A DNA stretch of 64,000 nt from Podarcis liolepis (GCA_965112155.1 OZ218099.1), one strand, 5' to 3'. Counted from the stretch's first letter, positions 47,175 to 50,176 are shown. The notes: generated by a model not told the origin, from the letters alone. Made by a program: numbers and translations.

Positions 47175-47244
47175 CTATCAGTCTTTTCAGAATATTCTGA
47201 AGCAATTCTGTTTTAGGGTGGTGGCATGGAATTAGTGTTGCCTC
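47175..47244 (+). promoter_or_regulatory. Intronic editing-complementary sequence (ECS) for the IQ-domain exon
   Basis: 47190-47233 pairs ungapped with exon 41 50067-50110 (32 Watson-Crick + 7 G:U of 44), with flanking helices on both sides. Confidence 0.85.
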
Positions 47245-48571
47245 GGGTCAACTTGATTCCCCTTCTTTTTATTGAAATACAGACACATGCTTCAGAATAG
47301 CGAGCCGTGCCTTCCTAAATTAAGCACATGGAGAGCATTTGTTGAGTGTGCATCTAGAGAATAAACCATAATACATTTTCCTCTACAGAGTGCAATTAAA
47401 GGTTCAGCTCCATTTCATTGCTGCTTTCAAAGTGAATATTGATTTTCCATTTGCATAGACAGCAAAGTACAGTGAACTTGTCTAGAGAAAAAGAATAGAT
47501 AATGCCACTAAAATGCAGAAAACAGAACACTGCCAAACAGGAAGTCTTTCACAACTTTAGGCAAATTGCAGTGAAAAGGGAATAGACATTTTTGCAGCTA
47601 TTCATGCCTGGAAGTTGACATACAGGAAAAAATACATGGAAATGTAATGTTTTATTAAAAACACAAGACAGGAAAGCTGCAAAGTAAACAACAATGTGAA
47701 GAAGACTTTAAGAATTTTGGTTAGTAGGAGAAGTGTAAATACTCCTAAATAAATAAATTACATTTATTTAATTTTTAATGTACTGCAAAGGTTCCAGGAT
47801 TATAAAGAAATGCATTATATAAACCACGGGTTTTTCACAAACTTACATGATAGGTCAGATTCCTGCATTCACTTAAGTATTATCTCTCAAACAGGATGTT
47901 ATAGCTAAGAAAAAGCCAAATCCCTGGTTTTTTTGTGGTGAGCAGACTTAATAAAGGAATAATGAATCTAGCAAGATTAATCATTACTGACCGTAAACCC
48001 ATTTCCTTAATTTACTCATAATTTCCAAGAGGTTTACAATGTCAAATTACTTGCAAATCATCAGGTTCAGTTTAACACTGATTAATTAACACTGCTAATA
48101 TATGATGGAAACAGGAAGAAATGTCACTTAAGTACAGATTCCTTTCTTTTACCCCAAGGTTTTATCTAAATTCCCCATCCTTTAACCTTCAGAGGCCACT
48201 GAAGCCCATCTGCCACCCTCCTGTCTTCTCCCCAAACTTGTTTTGCTGAAATTCGTTCCATTGGGTTTTTCTTTTATGTTGATTTCCACTCTGTTTAAAG
48301 TATGATCACTTCTGCTCCACGGCTTTCCTTCACATATCTAGTTATGTTTGTCTTTCTCAAAAGTCTGGACAGATTTTGTACCCATTGCTGTCCATGAAAT
48401 ATATTGTGGGTATGTCACTTTTGCACCTAGCTTTTTAACAACATCCAGGAACTTGCAAACAAAGCTGCTTTGCAGATGTGAATTGTGTGTATGCCCACAT
48501 TTACACATGCATATATGGTGCAACACCCACCCCAACTTATGGTACAGATAACTCACATCTAACGCTTATTT

Positions 48572-48660
48572 CATAGAATCATAGAGTTGGAATAGACCAC
48601 AAGTGCCATCGAGTCCAACCCCCTGCCAAGCAGGAAACACCATCAGAGCACTCCTGACAT
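48572..48660 (-). mobile_element. CR1 LINE extreme 3' end
   Basis: catagaatcatagagttggaa...gagtccaacccc (reverse of the ATTCTATG tail). Confidence 0.8.
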
Positions 48661-50045
48661 TACGAGATTGCAGCTTTGGCTAACAAAAATGCTTCTTGGT
48701 CTTCCCTTCCAGCTTTTAAGACTTGATCCTGAGTACTGAAGCCCCTAAACTTGCATTGTAATCAATGGAGGTTTATAGACCATGTATCCTTTAATAAGGC
48801 ATGGTGAGAGCAGGCTCAATGATGCTATTTAAGAGTCGGAATGGAACAGACAGGGCTCCCAACCAAGCTCCTTCAAATCTTTTTGTTTCTTGTTTTCTTT
48901 CATAAGATATCCTTTAACATCTTCTAACATAACACATACCACACCAAATCCTATCAGGCCTTACCTGTTCTGGTATATGGTCAATTTCAGGGTTTATTGT
49001 TTAAAGCTATCTACAGTTTAATAATTTGGAATTGCAGATAATGTAAATGGATTAGTTTTGACACACAGACCTCTTTTAAATATAAAATCCATACTTGATA
49101 GACATAGGTAATTGAAACTGACATTTTAAAAACATATATTCCAGTGAAGTGCAGATATCCTTATCTGGCAATTGCCAATAATAGCAAATATAGTCCAATA
49201 ATTAACAATGTCCGCTCATCGTGTTTTGTCTTTTTAAAATAACCTAGCAGCACTAATACTGTCAGATAAATGTAAAAGCTAATGCATGCTGGATAGCATC
49301 TGTAATAACACTTAGTCTTGATATGAACGCTTCACAATTTACCTGCCTTATTAATGATCTAAGATAGAGTTACGTTCTATCTTTGCTGTTATTTTGGAAC
49401 CAATTACTGCCAAAAGAGAGTATTAAATTCTCTCCTAAAAGACTACCGAACTGGACTCTCAGGTGAAAGTTTACCAAATTTAGTCTCCAGGGTTTGCCCC
49501 CAAACTCTGGTTTCCAATGCCTGATATATTACTTAATATGAATATTGCCTGCTAGGTGTTCAGGGAGTGAGATAATTTATATGCCACTTTAATAGGTCAG
49601 ACAGAAACAATAATAATTAGATATATTTGAATTCACTATGGTGATAATTTACTTGAAAGGCAGCAAATATGAAAAGGCCCTCCTCATATTATAGTTTTTA
49701 TAACACTCTGGTTCAAACTGATCAAAGTTTGCATTTTCAGAGTCATGTAGACATTTGCATTTTAAAAGATAATCTTACTTCTTCGAACTTTAATAAATTA
49801 GCATCTTTTCCTTTCTTAGGAAATAGTTCACCTATCAACTGCTTCTACTGCCTAGCCTTGTTTGCCTGCTAAAACTGCTTTATGCTAGATTTAGTCTGCC
49901 TTATTATCAGCAACAACAACAACAACAACAAAAACCCTTGTGCCAATGGCACTGTCACATTTTTTCCTGATTTGGATAAGAGTATATATTGGCTACTAAT
50001 GAAATGTGCTGACTTGGGAGAGATCTGTCTGGTCTGTTCATTTAG

Positions 50046-50176
50046 ATGATGAGGTAACCGTGGGGAAGTTCTATGCCACCTTCCTGATACAGGACTACTT
50101 TAGGAAATTCAAGAAACGGAAAGAACAAGGACTGGTGGGGAAACATCCTGCAAAGAACACCACAATTGCACTACAG
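50046..50176 (+). CDS. CACNA1D: Exon 41 (131 nt): [44 protein letters not shown] (calmodulin-binding IQ domain)
   Basis: catttag acceptor, cag|gtgatt donor; IQDY = ATA CAG GAC TAC at 50087-50098. Confidence 0.97.

What the first reader, a model, noticed from the sequence alone, without database searches (positions are those of the whole stretch)
47175..50138. Long-range ECS:exon duplex over the IQ domain suggests A-to-I recoding of Cav1.3 in a reptile
Seen: intron-40 sequence 47190-47233 (gaatattctgaagcaattctgttttagggtggtggcatggaatt) pairs without gaps to exon 41 50110-50067 with 32 Watson-Crick pairs, 7 G:U pairs and 5 mismatches. Extra helices: 47175-47186 with 50138-50127 and 47237-47244 with 50058-50051. 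Most departures from perfect complementarity keep G:U pairing, as expected for a selected RNA helix rather than a DNA duplication. The A of the Tyr codon (50097) faces C47203, an A:C mismatch that ADARs favour; the Ile (A50089) and Gln (A50091) sites lie in the stem. Established: mammalian ADAR2 recodes IQDY to MQDY/IRDY/IQDC through an upstream intronic ECS and weakens Ca2+-dependent inactivation. Inference: this lizard keeps the system ~2.8 kb upstream, possibly with a different site preference; in an ectotherm the duplex could make editing temperature-sensitive.
Basis: partly seen in the sequence, partly recalled or inferred. Interest (0 to 1): 0.85.

Follow-up and report, generated by a model that had tools for sequence, protein, structure and literature searches.

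The report
Cav1.3 RNA-editing guide duplex, lizard copy
A 44-base stretch in the intron before the calmodulin-binding (IQ) exon of this reptile's Cav1.3 calcium-channel gene pairs with that exon just as the known mammalian RNA-editing guide does. It is most likely the expected reptile copy of an old, already described system, not something new.

Summary
Bases 47190-47233 pair without gaps with exon bases 50110-50067: 32 Watson-Crick pairs, 7 G:U pairs and 5 mismatches. This is far beyond chance (z = -9.2; 0 of 1000 shuffles reach it; best complement to the exon in all 64 kb). The helix survives a minimum-energy fold of the whole 3.2 kb stretch. The two "extra helices" exist and are predicted to form, but their energies are no better than shuffled sequence gives.

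The exon is the Cav1.3 (CACNA1D) IQ exon, and the partner lies in the preceding intron, 2.8 kb upstream. The anatomy matches the published description of the mouse duplex: about 40 bp, four interruptions, the Tyr-codon A in the second, and the Ile and Gln A's in the stem between the second and third.

IQ-domain editing is reported in mammals including platypus, and in zebrafish. A lizard copy is therefore expected.

A different site preference has no structural support. Predicted pairing is the same at 22 and 37 °C, so the duplex is not a melting thermometer.

Verdict: new member of a known kind, low interest.

The parts
47190..47233 (+). [quoted passage not shown]
   Evidence: Pairs without gaps with 50110-50067 as 32 WC, 7 G:U and 5 mismatches. 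z = -9.2 against shuffles. Best complement to the exon in 64 kb. Present in the 3.2 kb minimum-energy fold. Pair probabilities mostly 0.9 or more.
50067..50110 (+). Exonic arm of the core helix (codons [14 protein letters not shown] of the IQ motif)
50046..50176 (+). IQ-domain exon of CACNA1D/Cav1.3 ('exon 41' by mammalian numbering). It is bounded by ag|AT and CAG|gt and encodes (D)[43 protein letters not shown].
   Evidence: Sequence read directly. Translation. Pfam Ca_chan_IQ, E = 1.7e-8. Best PDB match is alpha-1D 7uhf at 77.8 bits, against 57.8 for full-length alpha-1C chains.
50089..50089 (+). Candidate I-to-M editing site (ATA to ATG), base-paired with T47211 in the 6 bp stem
   Evidence: paired p = 0.92. 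Homologous site is edited in mammals and zebrafish.
50091..50091 (+). Candidate Q-to-R editing site (CAG to CGG), paired with T47209
   Evidence: paired p = 1.00. Weakly edited in mouse.
50097..50097 (+). Candidate Y-to-C editing site (TAC to TGC), opposite C47203 inside a 3x3 internal loop
   Evidence: paired p = 0.00. Matches 'TAC adenosine in the second bulge' in mouse.
47175..47186 (+). 5' flanking helix arm, pairs with 50138-50127
   Evidence: 9 WC and 3 G:U. In the minimum-energy fold. Energy not beyond chance.
47237..47244 (+). 3' flanking helix arm, pairs with 50058-50051
   Evidence: 7 WC and 1 G:U. Probability 0.95 or more in the 400+400 nt context, but absent from the 3.2 kb minimum-energy fold. 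Energy not beyond chance.
47166..47179 (+). Stretch just 5' of the ECS core that matches 12 of 14 bases of the mouse-specific part of the published mouse ECS mini-gene forward primer
   Evidence: Primer text. Match in the window. Window-wide chance expectation is 0.58 hits, so only its position at the ECS edge is informative.
45875..50045 (+). Intron between the pre-IQ exon and the IQ exon ('intron 40'). It holds the ECS 1.3 kb from its 5' end and 2.8 kb from its 3' end.
   Evidence: Exon mapping by translation and Pfam
45773..45874 (+). Preceding exon ('exon 40'), encoding [33 protein letters not shown]
   Evidence: Pfam Ca_chan_IQ profile positions 21-52.

Best explanation
[quoted passage not shown] In the pre-mRNA, before the intron is spliced out, 47190-47233 folds back over 2.8 kb onto the IQ-motif codons of the next exon. 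The result is an imperfect duplex of about 40 bp. ADAR2 binds this duplex and deaminates the Ile-codon A (50089, I to M) and the Tyr-codon A (50097, Y to C, opposite a C), and more weakly the Gln-codon A (50091, Q to R). This produces channel variants with an altered calmodulin-binding IQ motif in neurons.

Shown here: the duplex, its statistical strength, its strand specificity, its position in the preceding intron, and its match to the described mouse anatomy. Inferred: that it is homologous base for base to the mammalian ECS, and that the lizard actually edits these sites.
For: The duplex is real and highly non-random. It is kept in the fold of the whole 3.2 kb stretch, with pair probabilities of 0.9 or more.

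It is stronger on the transcribed strand than on the antisense, -81.2 against -58.8 kcal/mol. That is expected for selection on the RNA.

The exon is the Cav1.3 IQ exon and the genome keeps A at all three sites.

The segment pattern is 4 bp, 1x1 mismatch, 8 bp, 3x3 loop with the TAC A, 6 bp stem with the ATA and CAG A's, 1x1, 6 bp, 1x1, 14 bp. This equals the published mouse description: 40 bp, four bulges, TAC A in the second bulge, ATA and CAG A's in the stem between the second and third, and the ECS in the preceding intron 3.7 kb upstream.

The mouse ECS mini-gene primer matches 12 of 14 bases at the 5' edge of the lizard ECS.

In mouse, deleting the ECS abolishes editing both in a minigene and in knockout animals.

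[quoted passage not shown] A PNAS 2022 paper states conservation from zebrafish to human. A lizard is bracketed by editing lineages.

From established knowledge of ADAR preferences: the I/M and Y/C adenosines have the favoured 5' U and the Q/R adenosine has a 5' C. This fits the mouse ranking of the sites.
Against: No alignment with any other sauropsid, or with the mammalian ECS core, could be made. Orthology therefore rests on position, architecture and a 14-base primer match.

The flanking helices are not beyond chance, and the G:U excess is only p = 0.066.

An unchecked note of this scan (s1-846436) says another conserved editing site, GABRA3 I/M, is hard-wired as G in this genome. If that holds, editing sites can be replaced in this lineage. 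Here, however, all three sites are still A.
Confidence: 0.72

Rival explanations
1. The duplex is conserved and forms, but in this lizard its main role is control of exon-41 splicing, and editing is low or incidental. The duplex would mask the exon, its 3' splice site 5 nt away, or the internal AG at 50091-50092.
For: The pairing covers 50051-50138 and, in the minimum-energy fold, reaches 50156. That is most of the 131-nt exon, and it starts 5 nt from the acceptor. Mammalian exon 41 is known to be skipped or to use a different acceptor that removes the IQ domain. SRSF9, a splicing factor, binds around the mouse ECS.
Against: In mouse, ECS deletion abolished editing without changing Cav1.3 mRNA level or C-terminal splicing. 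The A:C opposition at the Tyr site and the paired Ile and Gln sites are features of an ADAR substrate, which splicing masking does not require.
Confidence: 0.12
2. The ECS duplex is retained, but editing in this lineage is negligible. The cause would be regulation such as SRSF9-like inhibition, fast splicing or low ADAR2. The helix would then be a conserved relic or be kept for another reason.
For: Editing was not observed here. In mammals, editing is restricted to CNS neurons despite broad ADAR2 expression, so the duplex alone does not guarantee editing.
Against: A 44-nt helix with 39 pairs would decay without selection. Lineages on both sides of reptiles edit the site.
Confidence: 0.12
3. 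The complementarity is a chance match or a neutral remnant of an old inverted duplication, with no RNA function.
For: The flank helices are at chance level. The G:U excess is not significant on its own.
Against: Core z = -9.2 and none of 1000 shuffles reach it. It is the unique top hit in 64 kb. It shows sense-strand bias, lies in the same intron as in mouse and has the same interruption pattern.
Confidence: 0.03

Closest known systems
Mammalian CACNA1D (Cav1.3) exon 41 / intron 40 ECS duplex, an ADAR2 substrate (Huang et al. 2018, PMC6101491; Zhai et al. 2022, PMC9371748)
   Same: Same gene, same IQ exon and the same three editable codons (ATA, CAG, TAC). The ECS is in the preceding intron, kilobases upstream. 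The duplex is imperfect, about 40 bp, with four interruptions. The TAC adenosine is in the second interruption, and the ATA and CAG adenosines are in the stem between the second and third.
   Different: The distance is 2.8 kb here against 3.7 kb in mouse. The host is a reptile, for which no report was found in the paper library. Editing and ADAR2 dependence are not shown here. Base-for-base identity of the core with the mammalian ECS was not compared.
Zebrafish cacna1da I/M recoding site (Pinto et al. 2014, PMC4053846, Table S7; Buchumenski et al. 2021, PMC8096273)
   Same: The homologous adenosine of the IQ motif is edited (level 0.5). This shows the system predates the split of ray-finned fish and tetrapods.
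   Different: Those reports give RNA evidence without describing the fish ECS. Here the ECS is seen without RNA evidence.
Other long-range intronic-ECS recoding substrates of ADAR2, such as GRIA2 Q/R (named from general knowledge, not tested here)
   Same: An exonic editing site is paired with an intronic complement that must act before splicing. The imperfect helix positions specific adenosines.
   Different: In GRIA2 the ECS lies downstream and only a few hundred bases from the site. Here it lies upstream and 2.8 kb away.

Membership tests
CACNA1D exon-41 ECS / ADAR2 recoding substrate | The target exon encodes the Cav1.3 IQ motif with genomic ATA-CAG-GAC-TAC (IQDY) | tested here: met
   Sequence and translation. 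Pfam Ca_chan_IQ. Best PDB match is alpha-1D over 43 of 43 residues.
CACNA1D exon-41 ECS / ADAR2 recoding substrate | The complementary sequence lies in the preceding intron, kilobases upstream of the exon | tested here: met
   ECS at 47190-47233 inside intron 45875-50045, 2.8 kb upstream. Mouse: 3.7 kb upstream.
CACNA1D exon-41 ECS / ADAR2 recoding substrate | Imperfect duplex of about 40 bp with four interruptions. The TAC A is in the second, and the ATA and CAG A's are in the stem between the second and third. | tested here: met
   Dot-bracket structures and pair probabilities compared with the text description of mouse Figure 1A. The figure itself was not available.
CACNA1D exon-41 ECS / ADAR2 recoding substrate | Sequence homology of the ECS to the mammalian ECS, and conservation across species | tested here: inconclusive
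   The only match is 12 of 14 bases between the mouse mini-gene primer and 47166-47179, at the ECS edge.
CACNA1D exon-41 ECS / ADAR2 recoding substrate | A-to-G differences between RNA and DNA at the three adenosines in neural tissue | not testable with these tools
Candidate RNA runs X21-X24 exist.
CACNA1D exon-41 ECS / ADAR2 recoding substrate | Editing depends on ADAR2 and is abolished by deleting the ECS | not testable with these tools
   Needs a bench experiment. Shown for mouse only.

The most novel reading that the evidence does not exclude
In this ectotherm the level of Cav1.3 IQ-domain editing changes with body temperature, and so tunes calcium-dependent inactivation of neuronal L-type channels to thermal state. 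The conserved duplex would be the platform. My folding shows the effect would have to come from enzyme or splicing kinetics, or from local breathing around the 3x3 loop, and not from melting of the helix.
Probability: 0.1. Interest if true: 0.55.

Novelty: new member of a known kind. Interest (0 to 1): 0.2.

Why it matters
It extends a functionally validated vertebrate recoding element (Cav1.3 IQ-domain editing) to a reptile genome. The whole architecture is kept, down to which adenosine sits in which interruption of the helix. That is a useful annotation: the intronic block should be marked as a functional RNA element and not as neutral intron. It also adds a data point for the deep conservation of one of the few recoding sites shared by fish and mammals. 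It does not change the current understanding of the system. It offers a defined substrate for anyone wishing to test temperature effects on site-specific editing in an ectothermic amniote.

Tried and rejected
Later work was local folding and energy arithmetic on the window file, plus searches beside those places.

2. Cross-species DNA. The exon-41 peptide was searched against 1.84 billion representatives. I did not scan metagenomes with longer Cav1 proteins. The expected hits were host or human contamination, which I may not keep.

3. Mammalian ECS letters. No supplement text is held for the NAR 2018 or PNAS 2022 papers.

4. Partition function of the whole 3.2 kb stretch timed out. It was replaced by a 400+400 nt context joined by a neutral linker.

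5. A first duplex scan with 120-nt windows separated the ECS poorly: -75.5 against -67.1 for the next window, because long windows chain many short helices. The ungapped scan and the core-only energies are the better statistics.

6. The second-best complement, 35422-35464, is a T-rich tract pairing with the purine-rich KKRKEQ codons. I rejected it as a low-complexity match.

7. Melting thermosensor: rejected.

8. Rfam and covariance-model searches of the ECS were not run, because its letters were barred.

Full report
**What is there**

The + strand of the window carries the 3' part of an L-type calcium-channel gene. Translation finds consecutive exons ending in ...[22 protein letters not shown] (about 42650-42767), [17 protein letters not shown] (about 42884-42985)..[27 protein letters not shown] (about 44311-44415) and [33 protein letters not shown] (45773-45874). 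Next comes the IQ exon at 50046-50176, and then an exon starting [15 protein letters not shown] at 63011.

The IQ exon is bounded by ag|AT and CAG|gt. It translates to [43 protein letters not shown] and hits Pfam Ca_chan_IQ. Its best solved-structure match is the alpha-1D (Cav1.3) chain over all 43 residues, at 77.8 bits. Full-length alpha-1C chains score 57.8.

So the gene is CACNA1D. By mammalian numbering, the exon is exon 41 and 45875-50045 is intron 40. Each exon was searched by reference.

**Check of the observation**

Every number in the finding was reproduced.
- 47190-47233 pairs without gaps with 50110-50067: 32 Watson-Crick pairs, 7 G:U pairs and 5 mismatches.
- 47175-47186 pairs with 50138-50127: 9 WC and 3 G:U.
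- 47237-47244 pairs with 50058-50051: 7 WC and 1 G:U.
- A50089, A50091 and A50097 are the editable adenosines of ATA (Ile), CAG (Gln) and TAC (Tyr). A50097 faces C47203.

The core helix is far beyond chance.
- Its energy is -47.2 kcal/mol, against -16.0 +/- 3.4 for 1000 dinucleotide shuffles. None reach it (z = -9.2).
- The best of 558 natural 44-mers from the same intron gives only -23.6.
- An ungapped complementarity scan of all 64 kb against the exon puts it first with score 57. The runner-up scores 39 and is a T-rich tract; everything else is near 32.
- The same scan for five other exon stretches of the window tops out at 29-43.
- The repeat finder independently lists the pair as the longest inverted repeat in 46000-51000.
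- The minimum-energy fold of the entire 47050-50250 stretch keeps the long-range helix and extends it to 47150-47168 with 50156-50139.
- With 400 nt of context on each side, pair probabilities are 0.9 or more along almost the whole core. A50097 is unpaired, and A50089 and A50091 are paired.

Two qualifications apply.
- The flanking helices are predicted to form. However, flank-against-exon energies are matched by 278 and 429 of 1000 shuffles. A pyrimidine-rich intron piece against the purine-rich KKRKEQ codons pairs well by composition alone. The 3' flank helix is also missing from the 3.2 kb fold.

The related strand test is clearer. The duplex is worth -81.2 kcal/mol on the transcribed strand and -58.8 on the opposite strand. 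That fits selection on the sense RNA.

**What it is**

The literature describes this element in mammals. Huang et al. [quoted passage not shown] The duplex is interrupted by four bulges. The TAC adenosine lies in the second bulge, and the ATA and CAG adenosines lie in the stem between the second and third. Human, rat and mouse ECS sequences are nearly identical. Deleting the ECS abolishes editing in a minigene, and a minimal ECS-linker-exon hairpin suffices.

The lizard core reads as follows:
- 4 bp
- a 1x1 mismatch (47194/50106)
- 8 bp
- a 3x3 loop holding A50097
- a 6 bp stem holding A50091 and A50089
- a 1x1 mismatch (47212/50088)
- 6 bp
- a 1x1 mismatch (47219/50081)
- 14 bp

That is the same architecture, interruption by interruption. 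The figure itself was not available.

The mouse-specific 14 bases of the published mini-gene forward primer match 47166-47179 in 12 of 14 positions, right at the 5' edge of the lizard ECS. Window-wide, 0.58 such hits are expected by chance and two were found. Only the position of this hit is informative. The reverse primer is the complement of lizard 50105-50121 (read by eye).

**Is editing expected in a reptile?**

- Zhai et al. 2022 (PMC9371748) state that IQ-domain editing is conserved from zebrafish to human. They show that knocking out the mouse ECS abolishes it, from 45% I/M and 29% Y/C to zero, without changing mRNA level or C-terminal splicing.
- Pinto et al. 2014 list the I/M site among the mammalian conserved set. 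[quoted passage not shown] In zebrafish cacna1da the level is 0.5.
- Buchumenski et al. 2021 again list cacna1d among five genes with editing sites shared by human and zebrafish.
- I found no paper dealing with this site in a reptile.

A lizard is thus bracketed by editing lineages. It keeps A at all three sites and keeps the duplex.

**What could not be done**

Four raw-read RNA runs with the same species label had been found, but no RNA evidence was obtained.
- The exon peptide search returned many genomic ORF fragments of this exon from other vertebrates. The exon-40 peptide was too short for the search for related loci.
- Conservation and covariation of the ECS in other sauropsids therefore remain untested.

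A different site preference has no structural basis, since the anatomy equals the mouse description. From general knowledge of ADAR neighbour preferences, the 5' neighbours (U at I/M and Y/C, C at Q/R) predict the same ranking as in mouse.

Temperature sensitivity through the duplex is not supported. A mini-hairpin goes from -103.5 kcal/mol at 10 °C to -57.0 at 42 °C. Pair probabilities at 22 and 37 °C are practically identical. Any temperature effect would have to come from enzyme or splicing kinetics.

**Verdict**

It is best read as the lizard orthologue of the known CACNA1D ECS (confidence about 0.7, including actual editing). The rivals are a splicing-control role (0.12), a retained duplex with negligible editing (0.12) and chance (0.03). 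It is a new member of a known kind, and interest is low.

Noticed in passing
window 50078-50092: Inside the IQ exon, the run CCACCTTCCTGATACAG|G looks like a 3' splice site. Its AG (50091-50092) is the AG of the Gln codon, so the Q/R-site adenosine is also the A of this internal AG. Mammalian Cav1.3 has an IQ-less variant made by different acceptor usage in exon 41. Another note of this scan (s1-848694) raises the same point. Editing at 50091 would change AG to IG. I did not test use of this site.
   Followed up: partly
window 35422-35464: A T-rich tract is the second-best complement to exon 41 (score 39) and the best complement to exon 40 (score 43). It pairs with the purine-rich Lys/Arg/Glu codons. 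I take it as a low-complexity match.
   Followed up: partly
window, coordinates not recorded (3 of 24 random 131-nt control windows scored): Three random intronic control windows had near-perfect reverse-complement copies elsewhere in the window (scores 223-241). The introns of this gene therefore hold long inverted repeat pairs, probably transposable elements. These could form much longer dsRNA than the ECS helix.
   Followed up: no
window 45700-50300: Fourteen very small runs (68-129 million letters, four organism labels, four studies) hold 10-44% of the sampled words of this mostly intronic stretch. That is too much for random low-coverage sequencing. They may be target-capture libraries in which part of this locus is a bait, but this was not resolved because no run could be laid.
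   Followed up: no
window 63011-63205: The ORF running on from the start of the next exon ([38 protein letters not shown]...) resembles P0007. P0007 is a fragment from another species in which exon 41 is joined directly to the same kind of sequence. The 3' end of this exon, and any alternative short C-terminal form, was not mapped.
   Followed up: no
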